From NCBI GenBank assembly GCA_025558095.1, contig JAIVFI010000012.1, positions 496,001 to 560,000 of the forward strand: a DNA stretch of 64,000 nucleotides, in the 5' to 3' direction. The notes under the pieces were generated by a model, which saw only the letters and a list, made by a program, of their open reading frames with translations, made no database searches and was not told where the DNA came from. The translations under genes were made by a program, and so were the position numbers. Source of the DNA: Hyaloraphidium curvatum SAG 235-1. Taxonomy: Eukaryota; Fungi; Monoblepharomycota. Numbering within the stretch: position 1 is the first letter of the stretch; the number at the start of each line of letters is the position of its first letter. Positions 54,102 through 62,895 of this stretch are shown here, piece by piece.

Positions 54102-57095
54102 TTACCCGAACAGCGCATCCGAGATGGCCCCAAACCATCCCCGCTTCCTCTCCGCCGGTGCCGGCTCCGGCGCAGCTAATCCGTCCGCGATCGCAGGCTC
54201 CTGTTCTGCCGAGGATGCCGCAGGAGTAGCGGAGGGAGGGAAGGCGGCCGCGGGGGGCGTTCGGGGGGAGGGAATCGGGTCGATCGGCGCCAGCCGCGGG
54301 AGGCGGTCCAGCGGATCGTCTTCCGCCGCAGGAGGTTGCTCGGGAGCCGCGTCCTCCGTCGGCAGATCGGGAGCGGGATCCGAGTCCTCGGCTGCAGCTC
54401 CGGCTTCCGCGTCCGTGCCCTCCTGCGGCGAATCAACCGCTAGAGCCACTTCCGCCGCTTCAGCACCCTCGCCCTCCTCGACCTTGCCATCCGCAGGCGA
54501 TCCCGCTTCTCCAATCCCCGTCTCCTCGCCTGCTTCCTCTCCTTCCTGCGAAGCTCCCGGCTCCGCTGGCTGCGCATCCCCGTCCGATCGCCCGCCGTCG
54601 GTCTCCTCGGCCCCCTCGGCCGGCCCACTCCCGGCCTCTGCACCCATCTCGCTCCCTCGCTCCTCCGCCTGCACTTGCCCAGCACCTTCCCGCTCCCCAT
54701 TCACCTCCACAGCAGCCTGGTCCGCATCGTGCGCGCTCCGCTCGACGCTCGCCACCGCCGTCGCCCTCGCCAGCTCCCCCCACGACACCGCCCCGCGGCT
54801 GCGGGACGGTCCCGATCCGTCCGGCATGTCCACGGGGGTGTTGGGCGGCGTCGGCGGGGGGAAGTTCTCGGGATCGGGGGACGGAAGGAGGGAGGGCGCG
54901 GAGGGAGGGGCGAGGGAGGCTTCCGGTTCGGCCGTCGGGCTCGGCGCGGCGGGACCTGCGTCCACGGGTTCTTGTGCGACGGCCTCCGGTTCCGGCTCCG
55001 GTTCCGGCTCCTGTTCGGCTTCCTGCGCGGATTCCGGGGCCGCACCGCCCGCCTGCTCGTCAGCAGTCACCAGCGTCTCGTCGGCGCTCCCATCCTCGTC
55101 CGCCTTTGCCGCCGCCGCCACACCGCCTGCACCTTCCCCGGGTTCCTCGGCCGCCGCGCCCTGCCCGCCCGGATCCAACCACGCAACCTGCCCCGCCTTC
55201 TTCTTCTTCCCCTTGACCTTTCCCGCCGCCTGCAGCGACCTCGCCCGCGTCGCCTCCATCTCCGCCGTGTAGCTCGCCGCCACCGCCGGGTCCGCCAAGC
55301 GGAGCGACACCGTCCACGCGGGCCCGTTCCGCGCGATCGCCGCCACCCCGGCGGCCTCGGCGGCCTCGAGCATCGCCCCCGGCCGCGCGAACCCGTGCTT
55401 CCACCCCGCAAACTCGGGAGCCCGCAGCGCGGCCTCGACCGCGCGCAGGGGGACGCCCGTGCCCGTCGCCGACAGCGAGACGAGCATGCGCACGAGGGGG
55501 AGCCATTTCTCGGGCACGCCGCGCGGGCGGAGGAGCGAGGAGCGGGCGTCGGGGAGGCGGACGGCGGCGTCGAGGGTGCGGGGCGAGAACTGCGAGGTGC
55601 GGTCCAGGGGGGGGAGGTCCGCGGGTTCGAGGAGGACGGCGCCGCGGGCGCGCGCGGATTCGAGGTAGCTGTAGGCGCTCTCGAAGCCGAGCTGGTGCGA
55701 TTCGATCTGCAGTGGGCGGTGGGTGAGGCACTCGACGGATGGGGGCAACGAACGAACCAACCTCGAGGGAGGCGGCCAGCTTGCGCAATTTGAGCTTCTC
55801 CCCCGAGTTGGCAAAGGACAGCGACCAGTCCGCCAGCTTCCGCAGCACGGGCCAGTACGCCGTCTCGAACGCCTCCAGCAGCGGCACCACCGCCGCCACG
55901 TCCGCCGCCCTCCTCTGCGCGTTGGCGGCCAGTACCAGGTTCCCCGCCTCGGAGAGGCAGCACGCGTCCGCCTGCGGATCCCAATGCACCAGGCCCGTGC
56001 GCACGGCGAGGTCGAGGCACGGTTCCGGGTCGAGGCCGCACCGCCGGCACGCGCTGTGCAGCAGCGCGGTGCGGACAAAGGGGGCCTTGCCGCTCTGGCC
56101 GAGGCGGCGGAGTTCCCGGAGGAGGGGGACGAGCTTCTCGGGCGGGGGGATCGGGGAGGCCGGGAGGTCGGCGGCGGAGGGGGAGGCGTCGGCGGGTTGC
56201 GCCGACGGCGCGTCCGGGCTCGACGGGGAAAAGGAAAGGTCCGAGTACTCGAACACGGGGTCTGCCGCCTCGGTCGAAGATTCGACGAGGGCGGCGGGCG
56301 CCGGCGGCGCAGGAGTCTGCAGAAATTGCTGCTGGAAAAAGGCCGGCGACGGCGTGGCGGGCAGAGAAAGCGCATCCGTCCGCAGCCTGTCGCCGGGCGG
56401 CGGCGTCGGGGGTACCAGTACGGGCGTCGAGGATGGCGGGGTCCGCTCGACGAGGAGGTCGCTCCACAGCATGTGCTCCCTCACGGCGTGGATCAGGACC
56501 GGCGATACCTTGGCCGGGTGGATCAGGACCACGTCGTAGTGGGCGAATTCGAGGAAGTTCAGGATCTGCTTGTGAGGTGAGTTCGTTTGGATGACGTGTC
56601 AGCGTCGGAACCTCCACCCGCCTTTGAGAAGTCGCGATCTCCTGAAATCAAGAAGATGGTGTGCGGCGACCTCCAGAAATAGACCAGCTTGAGCATCTCG
56701 CCGAGGATCGCAATGTCGGACGCGCTTGGCTTCCCGCTCGAGACGGAGCAGAGCACGACACCGGACTCTTCAAGCTCGAGCTTGATAGAGGCCGGAACGC
56801 GGTCCAGGTTCGCAATGATGATGATCTGAAGAGAGCATCGAAGCCGGAGGTCCGCGTCAAGGCAGCCCCGAGTAAGACGCCCGACACCTCCCACGTTCGT
56901 CAGCACGACGTTCCGGTCCCGCGCCAGATCCTTGATCCTCCTGACCACCTCGTACCCCCGCGTCTGGGCCCCGCACGGGCAGTTCTCCAGGTCCCAGAAA
57001 ACGGTGCCCCGGCGAGGTTCCGGTCCCGCAGGAGCCGCGGGGCCCGCGGAACCGAAGCTCGCCGCGTGGCCGGGGAAGTCGGCCACCCGAGCCAT
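54102..57095 (-). CDS. NYN-domain (PIN-like) RNase with winged-helix/LOTUS-like repeats and an acidic tail (MARF1-like architecture)
   Basis: TVFWDLENCP, KPSASDIAI, FLISGDRDFS..L and YDVVLIHP. Helical repeats LVPLLREL...LDLAVRTGLV and WLPLVRML...MLEAAEAAGV. Confidence 0.82.
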
Positions 57096-57755
57096 TCTCC
57101 CGGGAGCGACCCGCAAGCCTCGGCCGAGGCGGTGGAAGAGGTCTTTGATTTGTACACGCACAGGCGCCCAACACGACCCGGGGGATCAGCGTGAAGGCTC
57201 TGCGGGATCGATGTTTGGGCGGGTTGTCGCGCGCGCAGAGATGCGGTTCGCCACCTCGACTACTCCACGAATCGCAGGCAATCTCGGTCTATTTCTCGCA
57301 AGGATATCGTCTGGATTCATTTTCATTCGTGTCGCGGCTGGGCGGGGAGCTTCGGGCCGCGGAGACGCTCGGAATGGGCGTTGCTCGACCTGGCTTGCGC
57401 TGCACGATGCTAGTGGTCCAGCTAGGAGGACAGCACAGCAGGCACCTCCGCAGCGGTTACAGGGGCACTCTCATGGGTTGCCGTCCAGGATGCCCGCGTG
57501 GGGACGCTCGGTCGCGGTCACCGTGGACGCCGTCGTCGGCTGTCTCACAGGGACGACACGGCACGCGGCGTAGCTGTCGGGCGAGCAGTGATTAGCAAAT
57601 CCATGAATGAAAATCGACTGAATTGCATGGGTTGCGTTCTCTTGGGGGAGCACCTCGGGTGAATCATCACTCGACGCGCCGCGACATCAAAACACTCCAC
57701 AAGCCCCGCAAAGGAACGCGCGCAACCCAAGCAGGAAAAGCGCGGCCACGCGGCG

Positions 57756-60700
57756 ATGGCGTGCGCCCTGCCGAGCTGCAACCAGAAAGGCGCAAACACG
57801 TGCGGAACTTGCCGGAAGGTTTTCTACTGTTGGGTCTCCGTCCCTGTCGGCGACGTGTTCCATTAGCTGACCCCGGTGTCCCGCTTGCTGACCTCGACGC
57901 TTTCACGGTCGTGGTCACGACCGCCGCCCTCTTCACCGCTCGTCGGGATCCAGGCACGCGGGAGCACCAAATCGATGACTGGCCGCGCCACAAGCTCAAT
58001 TGCGTCGCACCGGTTCCTCGCAAGACCGGCACTGATGGCTATCCGGCCGAGGAGCTCGTGGTTCTCTTCCCGAAGCTCGACGAGGCAGGCTCCAACTTCA
58101 TGGACGTGTTGCCCCCGAACAAGGCCCGGAACCCCACGCACCTTCCGCTGCTCTTCCGCAGCGTGCTGGAGAGGGAGCAGCTCGCCCTCAAGGGCAAGGC
58201 GATCGTCGACCGGGCGACCTTCAAGCGGCAGTTCTCCGCTTTGACCTCCAACCTCTTCGACAGCTTCCCGGAGAAGCTGTGGGAAAACGTGCTGATTGCC
58301 GGCGGCAGCGTGCTTGCGGCCCTTCTGCCGCTCGACAACGGTTTCGCAAACCGGAGGTGGGCAGACCAAGCGCTTGCGTGCCGGAGAGGACAACCGATCG
58401 AGCGCATTGACTGATGTTGCTTTCAGGCCCCCTCTCACTGCCTCCCGCTACTATCACTACGACTTCCGTCCCCTCGGCTGGTCGGAGAAGCGCAAGTCGA
58501 TGCAGGATTTCATGCTGACGTGCCGGTGGCCGAGCGGCGACGTCGACATCTTCCTATACGGGCTCAAGGGGCAGCAGGCGACCTCCAAGATGATCGAGAT
58601 CTTCACCTTCCTCAAGAGCCGCTTCGTGGAGCTCTCTGGATCGAGCGAAGGCTCCGACTGCGTCTTCATAAAGACAGAGAATACGGTGACCATGGAGACG
58701 GGCAGCCCGCGGCGGAAAATCCAGGTCATCCTGCGCGAGTACAAATCGAAGGAAGAGGCCCTCAACGAGTTTGATCTGGACTGCGTCTGCGTGGGATACG
58801 ACGGGCGGGAGGTGCTCGCGACGCCGAGGTCCGTTACTTTGCTTTTTGGTGGAGTGATCCTCCATCTGACATTGTCTCCGTTCCACAGGGCTTTGAAGGC
58901 AATCTCGACCAGGGTCAACGTCGTGGACCTCTCCATCCGCGGAACCGCCTACGAATCTCGACTGCTGAAGTAGTGGGTCCGCATATCTCGATCGAGTTGC
59001 TTGCCTGGCTCACTCCGTGTTCTCGCAGCGCCGAGCGCGGATTTGCGGTTGCAATCCCCGGGCTCGATCTGTCCATGGTGGACAAGGGCCACCTCGTGCT
59101 CAAGCGGGAGCCGACGTACTGGAACAAGGACGAGGACGCGCTCACGAGCGATTCCTGGGACAGGTGGACGGAAGCGGAGAACCTGCTGCGGCTTCTCCTG
59201 GGCGACGCCATCGCCACCTCGGAGGGCTATATCGAGTTTCCGTTCCCCGGACGCATGAGACGCGCGCACGGCATGGAGGAGCGCATTGATTCTTGGTCGC
59301 TGCGGCTTTTCGACAACTACCCGGGAACCCGGCGCGGAGTTCGCGACTGGCCTGCAACGATGAAGCTCTCCGAGTTCCGTGCCGCCAAGGGCCCGTTTGC
59401 GATTTCCTGGAAGGAGGGCTCGATGCCCCGCCAGCCCCTGCCGTTCGACAAGTGGTCCGAGGGCTGCTTCAAGGGCAGCACGCGGCCTCTGACCTACAAG
59501 GAGTCGTGGAGGGAGAGGTTCGCCGCGCGGTCCAAGGACAAGAAGGAGGAGGCAGCCAAGCCAGCTTCCGCGGATCAGGCCGCCGAACCGCCCAAGCCCG
59601 CACGTGCGCCGACTCCGGACATCCCGGCCCCCGTCATTAGCCCGCGCGTGCTCGCAGCCGAGGCCTGGGTGGTGGCCTTCAAGACGCTGCTTCCCGAGGT
59701 GCGCGAGGCGTCGTCCGAGGCGGTCGCGGAGCTCTACCGGCGCCTCCACCCGTCGTCCGCTCTACCGGCCGTGAACTTGGCGTGGGAGAAGCTGGAAGAA
59801 TTCAAGGATTCCGAAGGAGGAGTTTCGCGAACTACACAGCGCGAGCCCGTGAAGCCCGTTGCCGCGGCTCGATCGATCGCGCCTTCGCGGCGCCGCGGGA
59901 CCGAACCGCGCGTCTGGCTTGCGAACCGCGTTTTCCGCGAGCTCAAAGAGCACGACGAGTCGCTGCTGAAGAAGCTGCAGGAGATCTTTGAGGACTCGCG
60001 CGGGATTTGGCAGGCTGGGAAGAAGGTCGCGGACGGCGTCTTCGAAGGCCGCCTGTCCGATCGCGCCAGGTTCTTTTTCCTCCAGCTGGACTCGGCTCCT
60101 CCGAGCTTCCTCGTGACTGCCGTGACGCTGACGCACAAGGGGATCAACAAGCTCATTACGCACAGCATGGAGCTGGCAAAGAAGGTTAGGGAGGCACCTG
60201 GGACCGCGATCGCCGAGGGACGTTCGGAGATGGACGCCGAGATCGCCGAGCATGCAAGGTTGACGCTGTCGGTGATGCGCTCGTTCCGGGAGGACGCCGG
60301 CAAGGTTTCGTGGTTCCTTCCTCGGCTCCATCTGGGCAACCTCGAGATGATCGTCGAGATCGGGCGGGACGGGACCGCCGTGCCTCTGCTTACGGAACAG
60401 GAGATGGAAGCTTTGGATATGGCATTGAAGCAGGGCTGTGTCGTTGTCGTCAAGGGCTCGGCGGGCAACGGGAAGACCACGGTGCTTGGCGAAATCGCAG
60501 CACAGGTCGACGGCTCGCTGCTATGTCTTCCGTCCGAGAGGCACAAGGCGCAGGTCTTGCGTACGTACCCGACCGTCAGGGCACTCACCGTGCGTGAACG
60601 TCTCGAGGAGATCTGGCCTCGGGATTGGCGGCGCGGTGGGCAGTTGTAGTTCAGCATTGCAGACTTTTCAGCTGACTCCTGAACCCAGTGACTTTCGCCG

Positions 60701-62373
60701 ACTTCATCGAGGCCAAGAAAGCCAAGCTCGAAAAATCCCCTGAGAGCTCGGTCAAGGCTGGCAAAGGCGCCAAGAAGCCGAAGGACAAAGCGTTGGACCC
60801 CCTTGCCGCATGGCGCGATCGCTTCTCCGACCCAGACTACTTTGCGTTCAAGGTTTGCGCTGCACCGCCTTTCGATGGAGATCGCTCATTGAGCGCGCTG
60901 CTCGTGAAGGCTTCGTCGGGACGCAAGGCCGAAGAGGACCTTTGGAACCACCTCGTCGAACAGTTTTCGAGCGGGCCTGCGGACGAGGTCAAGCGGAAGT
61001 TTGCTCCGACCTTGATCGATGAAGGGCAGTCCATGACGTCGACCGAGCTCAAGATCCTCGCGTTGGCCAGCGGATCGCCTCAGAATTGTGTCGTGGGAAT
61101 GGACTCGAAGCAGTCTGTTGGGAACGAGAGTGCAGGCCGCCGTGCCGCCGTCAAGAGCGCCATCTTCGCCGCCCTCCAGGCCGCGAACTACAGGAACCAA
61201 ATGGAGACGCACACCGTCGCGCTCACCGTCAACTTCCGCTGCCCCGTGGGCGTTCTGCGCGCTTTGCGAGGGATCATCGAGCGTTGGCTGAAGCCCTTCA
61301 AGGTTCTTGGTGTCGCGTCATCGCATGTTGATCCGCTGATCGTTCAATGCCCAGGACTTTGACGACTTCGCCGTCGACACCGTGGTTCGCTCCTCTCTCT
61401 GGGACTCGCCCCCGGTGTTTGTCACAACGAGCCTCGCGACGGTCAAGCAGTTGCTGGCTCGTCTTGCTATGCCAACCGTGGTCCTGCAGCCCGACGATCG
61501 CAAGGTTTCGGCCGACATGGACAGCCTCGGCCTCGTTCTGTCGATGTCTGGTTCGTGTAGCCAGCTGTCCTCTGTCGCGGACAGCGCTAACCGACATGCT
61601 GACCTAATCCCATAGAATGCCGGGGCCTCGAGTTCGACGAGCTCATTGTGCTTTCGAGTCCGCTCTCGGCCGGCACGATCAAGAGCTTCAAGGAAGCTGC
61701 GACGAACCTGCAGTCCGAGTCGTGGCGCAGCAACTCCGTGGAGGCACAGGCCGTCAAGGATACGCTGACGACTCTGATCGTGATGCTCACGCGGGCGAGG
61801 TTCGGAGTGATCTGGTTCGAGAAGGACCTGCATCATCCGCTCCTGGACGATCTCCGCGCGGGGGACGAGCCGTGCATCAGGGTCATCGAATCCGAATCCG
61901 ACGTCAACGATGCCGCCGCCCTCTTGTCCAAGGCGAGGAAGGACACCGTCGAAGACGACTCGAGCGCGAGCGGCTCCAGGTCGCTGACGAGCATGTTCTC
62001 TCGGGTCATGGAGGTGATCGTGGACTCGGTCGACGATTTCAAGCCGATCGACGGCCCCTGCGTGCAGGCAAAGAAACTAACTGATCGCATTCTCGACGTC
62101 GACTCCTCCGCCAAAGCCGGCGTCGGAAAAGCCCTCGATTCGCTTCCGGGCGCGGTTCTCGCCGCGCAGCTGCTCCGCGAGCCCACGGACAAGGACAAGC
62201 TTGCGATCCCGTTCTTCGGCGAGGTCCTCGGTGGCGCCTTCCTTGCGGCCATGGAAGCTCTGGATCCGCAACCGCCATCCGAGCCGTACACGCGCGTGGT
62301 CCGGGGGTGCGCTGATCTCTGCACCCGGCTCGGCCGTGCGGGGCAGGCGTCGCGGTTCGCGGCCAAGATCTGA
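57756..62373 (+). CDS. MYND zinc finger - nucleotidyltransferase-like domain - SF1 (UvrD/TRANK1-like) helicase fusion protein, about 8 exons
   Basis: Spliced N-terminus MACALPSCNQKGANTCGTCRKVFYC|TREHQIDDWPRHKLNC. NTase-like motifs LIAGGSV...SGDVDIF...FDLDC...RLLKYAERGF. Helicase motifs GSAGNGKTT, IDEGQ, GMDSKQ, LTVNFR, RGLEFD and MLTRAR. Confidence 0.8.
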
Positions 62374-62506
62374 TGGTCTTTGTTGTTATCTCACATTTTG
62401 AACGCAATGGGATCAAGTCCTCAATCGAACGGGCTTCCACGTGAAAGAAGGAAGGCGGAGCTCGGGTCATCATTGACCCGGGCGGACTTGGGACTCACCT
62501 TTCCAG

Positions 62507-62895
62507 CGAAAGCGTGCTCGTTTCCCGCCAACACCAGCGTCCCAAACCATGGAGAATCTTTCCGTGCCCTCTGCCCCGTCCCCCACTTCGGCAGAATGTT
62601 CCGTCAGCTGCACAGGCCTCGCGACAACGTTGTTCGGATCGAGAGGGACGGAAAGATCCCCAGGGGCAAGATCGGGATCCGAGGCAGCGGGACTGTCACC
62701 ATGAGCGTTCACTTTTTCCGCCCCCCGACCCCCGGGTCCCGGTTCATCCTTATGGACATGGAGAGCAGCATGATGCAGGGAATTGCTGACCACGCGATTT
62801 ACCTATTCGACGCCGGGATTGCACGTCAGATTCAGCACATGTGGGCTGTCCAGAACCCGGAGGACGAGGCCGCGGGCATCAAGCCCAAGCTCTGA
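62507..62895 (+). CDS. Possible additional terminal exon of the helicase fusion gene, or a small separate gene
   Basis: Open frame with coding-like codons. Donor GTGCGG at 62336 and acceptor TTTCCAG at 62506 are phase-compatible. Confidence 0.35.

What the first reader, a model, noticed from the sequence alone, without database searches (positions are those of the whole stretch)
57756..62895. MYND-nucleotidyltransferase-SF1 helicase fusion: candidate nucleic-acid sensing or RNA-tailing enzyme
Seen: the ORF track splits this gene into about six pieces and misses exon 1. Splicing 57829-57953 rebuilds a complete MYND finger. It is followed by a domain with GGS (about 58301), DVD (about 58540), FDLDC and RxxKYxxRGF, then a linker, then a full SF1 helicase motif series starting with Walker A at about 60455. 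Known: GG/GS...DxD is the Pol-beta-superfamily NTase signature, and I recognise this subtype from uncharacterised fungal ankyrin-repeat proteins. The helicase motif LVLSMSECRGLEFD resembles TRANK1/LBA1-type UvrD helicases. Inference: I know of no described protein combining all three domains. A helicase could gate a nucleotidyltransferase that tails RNA or makes a signalling nucleotide, by analogy with OAS/cGAS-type immune sensors.
Basis: partly seen in the sequence, partly recalled or inferred. Interest (0 to 1): 0.85.

Follow-up and report, generated by a model that had tools for sequence, protein, structure and literature searches.

The report
Fungal MYND–Gad2 nucleotidyltransferase–RelE-like–UvrD helicase fusion
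One spliced gene of the chytrid-like fungus Hyaloraphidium curvatum joins a zinc finger, a nucleotide-adding enzyme domain of the family of the phage anti-defence protein Gad2, a probable toxin-type RNase fold and a UvrD-type helicase; this combination is undescribed and rare, and it may give clues to how Gad2-type enzymes work.

Summary
Window 57756-62373 (+) is one 8-exon, 1378-codon gene with seven GT-AG introns. It ends at 62373, not 62895. The public model (KAI9024784.1, 860 aa) stops in retained intron 5.

Domains, in order:
- MYND finger (Pfam 35.4 bits).
- A low-complexity linker.
- A helical tail.

The fusion is real. Exon 5 alone carries both the end of the NTase module and the Walker A motif. 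An AT-rich metagenomic ortholog (L013) has MYND, Gad2 and helicase in the same order with a single intron.

The parts look shuffled. Sibling proteins are MYND-Gad2-RING, and paralogs in the same genome are IQ/TPR + RelE-like + helicase.

Function is inferred only. I favour RNA or nucleic-acid 3'-end nucleotidylation coupled to unwinding (TRAMP-like logic) in surveillance or conflict; a signalling NTase is less likely. No transcript data could be obtained. I rate it a new variant of known kinds, of moderate to high interest.

The parts
57756..57828 (+). Exon 1: start codon and first half of the MYND finger (first four Cys ligands)
   Evidence: Direct reading; splice table; identical to the N-terminus of public model P0094
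57829..57953 (+). Intron 1 (125 nt, GT..AG), splits the MYND finger
   Evidence: the junction is used in P0094, which scores zf-MYND at 35.4 bits
57954..58356 (+). Exon 2: second half of MYND, then the N-terminal part of the Gad2-type NTase module, including AGGS (GGS at 58301-58309)
   Evidence: In the model a strand, then G-G-S, then a helix
58427..58828 (+). Exon 3: catalytic core of the NTase. DVD at 58539-58547, RKIQVILREYKS, FDLDC at 58770-58784
   Evidence: phrog_1614 nucleotidyltransferase E 6.9e-5 over this part
58889..58972 (+). Exon 4: NVVDLSIRGTAYESRLLK-Y, first part of the family's R-x-x-KY-x-x-RGF block
   Evidence: The donor was chosen at 58972, as in P0094 and as the family consensus requires
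59029..59476 (+). Exon 5, first part: C-terminal half of the Gad2-type module (AERGFAVAIPGLD... to about residue 470)
   Evidence: (hits P0099-P0133 cover query residues 1-190)
59477..59899 (+). Exon 5, middle: low-complexity K/E/A/P-rich linker
   Evidence: Direct reading. Low pLDDT in the ortholog model
59900..60202 (+). Exon 5: RelE/ParE-looking block (RVWLANRVFRELKE ... VFEGRLSDRARFFF ... VTAVTLTHKG)
   Evidence: Conserved in orthologs and in paralogs P0096-98. Beta-alpha-alpha-beta4 topology in model m441d9e770ce5. Nearest named atlas clusters are ParE_like, YhaV and RelE/StbE at 0.85-0.87. There is no significant sequence match
60344..60635 (+). Exon 5, end: start of the SF1A helicase. 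Walker A GSAGNGKTT at 60455-60481, and motif Ia
60636..60688 (+). Intron 5 (53 nt, GTGGGC..CAG). The public model reads into it and stops at 60647-60649
   Evidence: The junction RDWRR|V|TFADF matches KDWRRVVFADF in P0098 and SKRVTFGEF in P0095
60689..61302 (+). Exon 6: helicase motif II LIDEGQS (DEGQ at 61018-61029), motif III GMDSKQSVG, motif IV NFRCP (61231-61245)
   Evidence: alignment. Weak Pfam UvrD-helicase match on this exon, over the cut-off on the ortholog
61355..61550 (+). Exon 7: start of helicase domain 2A (DFDDFAVDT ... LVLSMS)
61616..62373 (+). Exon 8: motif V CRGLEFDEL (61618-), motif VI VMLTRARFG (61780-61806), C-terminal helical domain, stop TGA at 62371-62373
   Evidence: (aligns to residue 1074 of the 1075-aa ortholog)
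62380..62895 (+). It has only a weak resemblance to the C-terminal domain of acyl-CoA thioesterases
   Evidence: 4HBT_3C E 0.012-0.013, below the cut-off. It is not among the genome's 4HBT_3C matches. Orthologs end before it

Best explanation
Window 57756-62373 is a single nuclear gene of Hyaloraphidium curvatum encoding a 1378-residue protein. Its parts, in order, are:
- MYND zinc finger (partner recruitment).
- A catalytically intact Gad2-family Pol-beta nucleotidyltransferase, shaped like the head and neck of class-II CCA-adding enzymes and poly(A) polymerase.
- A flexible linker.
- A RelE/ParE-like fold.
- A UvrD/Rep-like SF1A helicase.
- A helical tail.

Shown: the gene structure, the domain identities, the intact motifs, and conservation of the whole architecture in a distant organism.

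Inferred: it works as a nucleic-acid end-processing machine. The 3'-5' SF1A motor engages and unwinds an RNA (or DNA) 3' end. The tethered NTase adds untemplated nucleotides to that end. The RelE-like module binds or cuts RNA. MYND docks the enzyme on a partner. This is one-polypeptide logic like the TRAMP complex (zinc knuckle + Trf4 NTase + Mtr4 helicase). Its modules are shuffled among conflict-type proteins (MYND-Gad2-RING siblings, IQ/TPR-RelE-helicase paralogs, giant-virus and phage Gad2 homologs), so the likely setting is RNA surveillance or defence against genetic parasites.

The confidence given (0.45) is for the whole statement including the inferred mechanism. For the anatomy alone (one gene with these domains) I would put it at about 0.9.
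For: Gene model:
- Eight exons, all introns GT-AG, 4137 nt open.
- Exons 1-5 are identical to the public model P0094 = KAI9024784.1.
- The remaining junctions and the C-terminus are fixed by alignment to orthologs and paralogs.

Fusion is real:
- Exon 5 is one uninterrupted ORF holding the NTase C-terminal half, the RelE-like block and Walker A.
- Metagenomic contig L013 encodes MYND + Gad2 (Pfam) and then a 1075-aa single ORF with the rest of Gad2 and the whole helicase, separated only by a 59-nt GT-AG intron. Identity to the window protein is 42%, 36% and 33% across its length. L009 shows the same arrangement.

NTase:
- AlphaFold model pLDDT 90, pTM 0.91.
- Nearly all listed Foldseek PDB hits are Pol-beta NTases.
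- phrog_1614 'nucleotidyltransferase' E 6.9e-5.
- Motif carboxylates are conserved in 97-99% of members.
- The atlas labels the family PF26128 Gad2, by features 0.95 and by shape TM 0.63-0.70.

Helicase:
- Motifs I-VI are intact.
- Ortholog Pfam hits: SLFN-g3_helicase, AAA_30, AAA_19, ResIII and UvrD-helicase, all over their cut-offs.

Shuffling:
- Siblings are MYND-Gad2-RING, HMG-Gad2-RING and Gad2-RING.
- Paralogs are IQ/TPR + RelE-like + helicase.
- 83 giant-virus structural matches at E <= 1e-3.
Against: - There is no transcript evidence.
- The public annotation ends the protein at 860 aa.
- Nothing here shows catalysis, a substrate or a biological role. A shared fold does not give a function.
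- Foldseek E-values to solved NTases are weak (best 2.9e-3).
- The helicase fold was modelled on the ortholog, not on the window protein, at only pLDDT 69.
- The RelE-like call rests on topology and language-model neighbours under 0.9.
- RING partners in sibling proteins could instead point to a protein-directed role for the NTase.
Confidence: 0.45

Rival explanations
1. Signalling NTase. The helicase senses foreign nucleic acid and switches on the NTase, which makes a linear or cyclic oligonucleotide second messenger. The RelE-like or another protein is the effector.
For: CdnC, OAS1, cGAS and DncV appear among the Foldseek hits at E 0.006-0.07. The family is named after a phage anti-defence protein. 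The domain shuffling resembles that of immune systems.
Confidence: 0.15
2. The NTase domain modifies a protein or small molecule (AMPylation or nucleotidylylation), or acts as a nucleotide-binding regulator. The helicase-like module is then an ATP-driven scaffold, and MYND, RING, BTB and ANK partners across the family point to protein targets.
Against: The best structural neighbours all extend RNA 3' ends. The many invariant Arg and Lys residues (R255, R262, R293, R310, R317, K320, R324) fit a polyanionic substrate. The fusion partner here is a nucleic-acid motor with intact motifs.
Confidence: 0.15
3. Two genes rather than one. The MYND-NTase protein ends at about 860 aa, as in the public annotation, and the helicase part is a separate transcript or a decayed remnant.
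For: Public model KAI9024784.1 stops at 60647-60649. No RNA data were obtainable.
Against: That model would carry Walker A without motifs II-VI. Intron 5 has consensus GT..CTGAC..AG, and its removal restores RDWRR-V-TFADF, which matches paralogs and orthologs residue for residue. Exons 6-8 are open, conserved and motif-complete. The ortholog has the junction inside a single 1075-aa ORF.
Confidence: 0.04
4. A catalytically dead, purely structural fusion (a pseudo-enzyme used as an adaptor).
For: Functionally uncharacterised eukaryotic Gad2 homologs could in principle be scaffolds. Phage Gad2 itself has FDFT in place of FDxD.
Against: In the window protein and its ortholog every NTase and helicase signature residue is present, at about 40% overall identity, which implies purifying selection on them.
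Confidence: 0.06

Closest known systems
Phage Gad2 (Gabija anti-defence 2; SPbetaL7 WIT28108.1; Pfam PF26128)
   Same: Same Pfam family label for the orthologs, paralogs and siblings. The motif blocks are collinear: IAGG[AS], DVDI[FY], Q-x-[IV]...S..E.[IL]..FD..C..[FY]D, R-x-x-KY. Both match phrog_1614 NTase over overlapping profile positions. Both are predicted NTases.
   Different: The direct sequence statistics are weak: hhalign E 0.014 with probability 3%, BLASTP 0.075, and my HMM does not score above shuffles. Phage Gad2 is a 400-aa stand-alone protein that counteracts a defence system containing a UvrD-like helicase. Here the NTase is covalently fused to a UvrD-like helicase in a eukaryote. 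The mechanism of Gad2 is itself unknown.
Class-II CCA-adding and A-adding enzymes, bacterial poly(A) polymerase I, TENT5/FAM46
   Different: No significant sequence similarity (no PDB sequence hit at E <= 10; no PolyA_pol Pfam hit). The C-terminal half differs. There are no tRNA-binding body or tail domains.
TRAMP complex (Air1/2 zinc knuckles + Trf4/5 NTase + Mtr4 helicase)
   Different: TRAMP is three separate proteins. Its helicase is SF2 (Ski2-like), not SF1A. Its NTase belongs to a different family. MYND is a protein-binding finger, not an RNA-binding one.
H. curvatum paralogs P0096 and P0098 (1816 and 1847 aa; IQ/TPR + RelE-like + UvrD-like helicase)
   Same: The RelE-like block, helicase and C-terminal tail are shared at 33-42% identity, with identical motif wording.
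   Different: Their N-terminal 1000+ residues are protein-binding repeats rather than MYND + NTase.
MYND-Gad2-RING proteins of uncultured eukaryotes (P0113, P0115, P0126)
   Same: Same N-terminal MYND and the closest NTase subfamily (phmmer E 1e-73 to 1e-76, 35-40% identity).
   Different: They end in a C3HC4 RING finger instead of the RelE-like + helicase module, and they are about 600-700 aa long.
Schlafen 11/13-type proteins (N-terminal RNase + C-terminal SF1 helicase)
   Different: The nuclease fold is different (Schlafen core versus RelE-like). Schlafens have no NTase and no MYND. UvrD/Rep are closer structural matches than SLFN11.

Membership tests
Pol-beta nucleotidyltransferase superfamily | h-G-[GS] turn between a strand and a helix, followed by D-x-D at the start of the next strand | tested here: met
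   AGGS (P0094 140-143) follows strand 137-140 and starts helix 142-148. D197-V-D199 opens strand 198-203. These residues are conserved in 91/91, 93/96 and 95/96 members.
Pol-beta nucleotidyltransferase superfamily | A further conserved carboxylate completing the metal site | tested here: inconclusive
   D275 and D277 (FDLDC) are conserved in 101/102 and 100/102 members.
Pol-beta nucleotidyltransferase superfamily | Alpha/beta NTase fold | tested here: met
Pfam PF26128 (Gad2) | Match to the family HMM | tested here: inconclusive
   PF26128 is not in the local Pfam copy, so the window protein could not be scanned directly. Precomputed hits exist for the ortholog's N-terminal gene, for the genome's own paralog P0001 and for about 90 homologs. 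The window domain matches those members at phmmer E 1e-16 to 1e-90. Its nearest atlas clusters are 85-96% PF26128 (score 0.95, TM 0.63-0.70).
Pfam PF26128 (Gad2) | Homology to the founding phage protein Gad2 | tested here: inconclusive
   Four collinear motif blocks are visible, and both proteins hit phrog_1614. The direct statistics are not significant. That the Pfam name refers to Gabija anti-defence 2 is my inference.
Pfam PF26128 (Gad2) | Anti-Gabija activity | not testable with these tools
   This is a genetic phenotype in Bacillus phage. It is not expected for a fungal protein.
zf-MYND (PF01753) | HMM score over the gathering cut-off, and eight Zn ligands in C4-C2HC-like spacing | tested here: met
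   35.4 bits against 22.7 on P0094. The ligands are C3, C8, C16, C19, C25, H29, H36 and C40. The ortholog scores 35.1 bits. The split halves alone score below the cut-off.
SF1A UvrD/Rep-like helicases | Motifs I, Ia, II (DExQ), III, IV (N[FY]R), V ([KR]GLE[FY]), VI (TRA) | tested here: met
   GSAGNGKTT, LCLPSE..AQVL, LIDEGQS, GMDSKQSVG, NFRCP, CRGLEFDEL and VMLTRARFG are all present and aligned with orthologs and paralogs.
SF1A UvrD/Rep-like helicases | Two RecA-like domains with UvrD/Rep-type topology | tested here: met
SF1A UvrD/Rep-like helicases | Pfam UvrD-helicase / AAA_19 over the cut-off | tested here: inconclusive
   On the window exons these are below the cut-off (11.2-14.8 bits). 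On ortholog P0095 UvrD-helicase scores 23.1 against 23 and AAA_19 26.6 against 25.1, and on paralog P0098 UvrD-helicase scores 34.1.
RelE/ParE toxin fold | Beta-alpha-alpha-beta-beta-beta topology and similarity to solved RelE/ParE/YoeB | tested here: inconclusive
   The topology is present in the model (E26-30, H31-40, H42-53, E63-96; pLDDT 55-75). The nearest named atlas clusters are ParE_like 0.87 and YhaV, ParE and RelE/StbE at 0.85, which count as leads only. There is no Pfam hit and no PDB sequence hit.
TRANK1/LBA1-type helicases | Sequence relationship to TRANK1 | not tested
cGAS/OAS/CD-NTase signalling enzymes | Closest structural neighbours are cGAS/DncV-like, with a matching lid and spine helix | tested here: not met

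The most novel reading that the evidence does not exclude
The covalent pairing of a Gad2-type NTase with a UvrD-like helicase reflects a shared substrate. Gad2-type enzymes would nucleotidylate the very 3' ends (or nucleotides) that UvrD-like motors load on or sense. The fungal protein would then be a eukaryotic immune or surveillance effector assembled from a 'defence' motor (as in Gabija GajB) and an 'anti-defence' enzyme. It would also reveal how phage Gad2 disarms Gabija.
Probability: 0.12. Interest if true: 0.85.

Novelty: new variant of a known kind. Interest (0 to 1): 0.6.

Why it matters
Gad2 is a genetically proven phage counter-defence protein whose enzymology is still unknown. Its eukaryotic and giant-virus relatives, hundreds of ANK-, BTB-, TPR- and RING-linked proteins, have never been studied.

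This gene is a natural fusion that names a likely working partner for such an NTase: a UvrD-type motor plus a RelE-like fold. A partner of the same helicase class sits in the system that Gad2 attacks. That gives a concrete biochemical hypothesis, 3'-end nucleotidylation coupled to translocation, which can be tested with one recombinant protein.

It also corrects a truncated public gene model. It adds a case to the growing list of prokaryote-type conflict modules (RelE fold, Gad2 NTase) embedded in early-diverging fungi.

Tried and rejected
2. First call for intron 5. I initially placed it at 60561-60688 (GTACGT donor). I rejected this when ortholog P0095 showed that RTYPTVRALTVRERLEEI is coding. 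The correct intron is 60636-60688.
3. Extending the gene to 62895 through a further intron. Rejected because orthologs end with the window's stop at 62373, and the downstream ORF has only a sub-threshold thioesterase match.
4. Local Pfam, NCBIfam and PDB sequence searches of the NTase module gave nothing. PF26128 is absent from the local library.
5. tblastn of the NTase core against 50,697 phage records found no match.
7. Direct statistical link to phage Gad2. hhalign, BLASTP and my own HMM were all non-significant. Only the shared PHROG hit and the motif order support the link.
8. The RelE-like block against Pfam and PDB sequences gave nothing.
9. Word-indexed searches for more helicase relatives returned only 3-4 proteins each, so TRANK1 could not be compared.
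10. The joined spliced protein was never built, searched or folded. Exons were searched by reference, and full-length reasoning used the public model P0094 and the ortholog proteins by id.

Full report
**Origin**

The window is G000 contig 12, 496001-560000, in a 31.9-Mb assembly of 55 contigs. Proteins identical to its products are NCBI entries of Hyaloraphidium curvatum. The contig lengths given for those records (786,496; 849,464; 816,567) equal those of G000 C12, C9 and C11. The organism is therefore H. curvatum, an early-diverging fungus of the Monoblepharidomycetes.

**Gene model**

Reading the + strand and tabulating splice sites gives eight exons:
- 57756-57828
- 57954-58356
- 58427-58828
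- 58889-58972
- 59029-60635
- 60689-61302
- 61355-61550
- 61616-62373

There are seven GT-AG introns of 52-125 nt, each with a CTGAC-, CTGAT- or CTCAC-like branch site. The total is 4137 nt, that is 1378 codons plus TGA.

Exons 1-5 are exactly those of the public model P0094 = KAI9024784.1. That model reads into intron 5 and stops at 60647-60649, giving an 860-aa 'hypothetical protein' that has a Walker A motif but no other helicase motif.

My first guess for intron 5 (60561-60688) was wrong. Ortholog P0095 shows that RTYPTVRALTVRERLEEI is coding. The true intron is 60636-60688, which joins RDWRR-V-TFADF. This matches KDWRRVVFADF in paralog P0098.

Junctions 6/7 and 7/8 and the C-terminus are fixed in the same way. 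Exon 8 aligns to residue 1074 of the 1075-aa ortholog ORF.

The ORF at 62380-62895 has only a sub-threshold match to a thioesterase C-terminal domain. It is not among the genome's many real copies of that domain.

Exons were searched by reference. Full-length arguments use P0094 and the ortholog proteins by id.

**The observation**

- GGS at 58301-58309
- DVD at 58539-58547
- FDLDC at 58770-58784
- RLLKYAERGF across intron 4
- Walker A at 60455-60481
- LVLSMS|ECRGLEFD across intron 7

The MYND finger rebuilt by removing 57829-57953 scores 35.4 bits against a cut-off of 22.7.

**The middle domain**

Local Pfam sees nothing. A paralog in the genome (C3; L002, equal to P0001, TPR + this domain) led to 93 homologs that all carry PF26128 in precomputed annotation. 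Many also carry ANK, TPR or BTB_2, and they come mostly from fungi.

PF26128 is missing from the local library. The ESM Atlas tables (Pfam 38.1) name it 'Gad2'.

A 106-sequence alignment (A1) shows these residues conserved:
- G141 in 91/91
- D197 in 93/96 and D199 in 95/96
- D275 in 101/102 and D277 in 100/102
- a string of near-invariant Arg and Lys residues, and the KY..RGF block

AlphaFold on A1 gives pLDDT 90 and pTM 0.91, with strand, then GGS, then helix, then a DVD strand.

BFVD returns 83 matches at E <= 1e-3. The best are ANK, BTB and VWFA proteins of giant viruses, with Fadolivirus at 7.5e-22. The atlas shape search adds haptophyte BTB_2-Gad2 proteins, Nucleocytoviricota, a Uroviricota cluster and bacterial poly(A) polymerase I.

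**Link to phage Gad2**

Gad2 is a 400-aa protein of Bacillus phage SPbetaL7. It is needed to overcome Gabija, and AlphaFold predicted it to be an NTase. Later reviews still give no mechanism.

I fetched it (OQ921347.1 109563-110765, annotated 'Gad2'). It shows the same four blocks in the same order as the window protein:
- IIAGGAI
- DVDIYF
- LQMIHFKFFSDAESIFNTFDFTVCMGAFD
- RVQKYTDKEY

The direct statistics are not significant:
- hhalign E 0.014, probability 3%
- BLASTP 0.075
- my HMM does not score above shuffles

However, Gad2 and the window domain both match the phage family phrog_1614 'nucleotidyltransferase' over overlapping profile positions. The E-values are 8.2e-6 for Gad2, 6.9e-5 for the window domain and 4.1e-7 for sibling P0072. 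I treat the relationship as probable and distant. That the Pfam name refers to this protein is my inference.

**The helicase and what lies before it**

Alignment A2 shows motif I, Ia, II (LIDEGQS), III (GMDSKQSVG), IV (NFRCP), V (CRGLEFDEL) and VI (VMLTRARFG). This is UvrD/Rep (SF1A) wording.

On the window's exons, Pfam is sub-threshold. On ortholog P0095 the following pass their cut-offs: SLFN-g3_helicase, AAA_30, AAA_19, ResIII and UvrD-helicase.

Upstream of Walker A lies a block conserved in all relatives (RVW..R.F.EL ... QKKV..VFEGRL...RFFF ... VT.V.L.HKG). In the model it folds as beta-alpha-alpha followed by four strands.

For that block, the nearest named clusters by language-model features are ParE_like (0.87), and YhaV, ParE_toxin and RelE/StbE (0.85). 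These scores count as leads only. Pfam and PDB sequence searches find nothing.

Other agents of this scan reported a RelE fold in the paralogs. I could test that only partly.

**Is the fusion real and conserved?**

Exon 5 is one open frame carrying the last roughly 150 residues of the Gad2 module, the linker, the RelE-like block and Walker A. No splice decision can therefore separate the NTase from the helicase.

In a search of 1.84 billion cluster representatives, only the window's own protein and one other cluster (P0095) span both parts.

P0095 and its relatives lie on AT-rich metagenomic contigs:
- L013 (5405 bp) encodes MYND + Gad2 (Pfam hits), then a 59-nt GT-AG intron, then one 1075-aa ORF with the rest of Gad2, the RelE-like block, the full helicase and the same C-terminus.
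- Identity to the window protein is 42% over the N-terminal 310 aa, 36% over the exon 5 region matched in P0095 and 33% over the tail.
- L009 shows the same junction. L014 carries a related helicase, P0151, but its upstream gene has no Pfam hit.

The architecture is thus under selection in at least two very divergent eukaryotes, and it is rare.

**Evolutionary context**

The closest NTase siblings are MYND-Gad2-RING (P0113, P0115, P0126), HMG-Gad2-RING (P0072) and Gad2-RING (P0107, P0122, P0129).

The RelE-like + helicase + tail module occurs in three more H. curvatum genes with long IQ/TPR N-termini.

The gene therefore looks like a recombination of an MYND-Gad2 head with a RelE-helicase body.

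GC content (about 0.60-0.64) matches the flanks, and the gene has ordinary introns. It is therefore a resident gene rather than a recent viral insertion.

**Mechanism (inferred)**

The NTase and helicase signature residues are all intact, so both are probably active.

The best structural neighbours add nucleotides to RNA 3' ends without a template. SF1A motors load on 3' single-stranded tails and move 3'-5'. RelE-type folds bind or cut RNA.

I therefore favour a machine that unwinds or strips a nucleic acid and nucleotidylates its 3' end, recruited by MYND to a partner. This is functionally like TRAMP in a single chain. The likely setting is RNA surveillance or genetic conflict, given the company its modules keep.

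A protein-directed role is suggested by the RING siblings. The two-gene reading is very unlikely.

**Limits**

- There are no expression data.
- There is no activity data.
- The helicase fold was modelled on an ortholog at moderate confidence.
- The RelE-like fold and the Gad2 link are not statistically secured.
- TRANK1 was not compared.
- The literature searches cover open-access text only.

Noticed in passing
window 56559-57161 (-): The upstream neighbour on the opposite strand is a NYN-domain (RNase-fold) protein (Pfam NYN E 4.8e-8, 34.1 bits). It is transcribed divergently, and about 600 bp separate the end of its ORF at 57161 from the MYND gene's ATG. Possible co-regulation of two RNA-directed proteins was not examined.
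   Followed up: partly
window 62380-62895 (+): A 171-codon ORF directly after the gene's stop has a sub-threshold match to the C-terminal hotdog domain of acyl-CoA thioesterase II (E 0.012) and ends in ...KPKL, which resembles a peroxisomal signal. It is not detected in the genome-wide scan, which finds 22 matches to that family, 19 of them over its cut-off. It may be a decayed fragment or a chance ORF in the 3' UTR.
   Followed up: partly
window 60636-60688: The public protein KAI9024784.1 (860 aa) retains intron 5 and ends at 60647-60649. The database entry therefore lacks about 520 residues, including helicase motifs II-VI.
   Followed up: yes
L002 (G000 C3:457830-461132): The only other Gad2-family gene found in this genome is a TPR + Gad2 protein (P0001, 811 aa). 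Its NTase motifs read AGGA rather than AGGS, with DVD and FDVD retained.
   Followed up: partly
L010, L011, L012 (G000 C9:712500-722499, C11:316000-325999, C12:581000-590999): Three paralogous giant genes share the RelE-like block, helicase and tail. One lies only about 24 kb beyond this window on the same contig.
   Followed up: partly
window 54500-56500: A very GC-rich stretch (0.71-0.75) carries overlapping ORFs of 266-516 codons on both strands, made of low-complexity Ala/Gly/Arg/Pro sequence. The ORF lists here are unreliable.
   Followed up: no
L013 5031-5348: The ortholog's contig is AT-rich with Asn runs and STISTIS... repeats downstream. The source organism of the orthologs (ENA ERZ27280226 and ERZ27280272, Logan SRR30952583) was not identified.
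   Followed up: no
L016 (OQ921347.1 109563-110765): Phage Gad2 has FDFT where the eukaryotic family has the near-invariant FDxD. The second carboxylate of that block is therefore not universal in the wider family.
   Followed up: no
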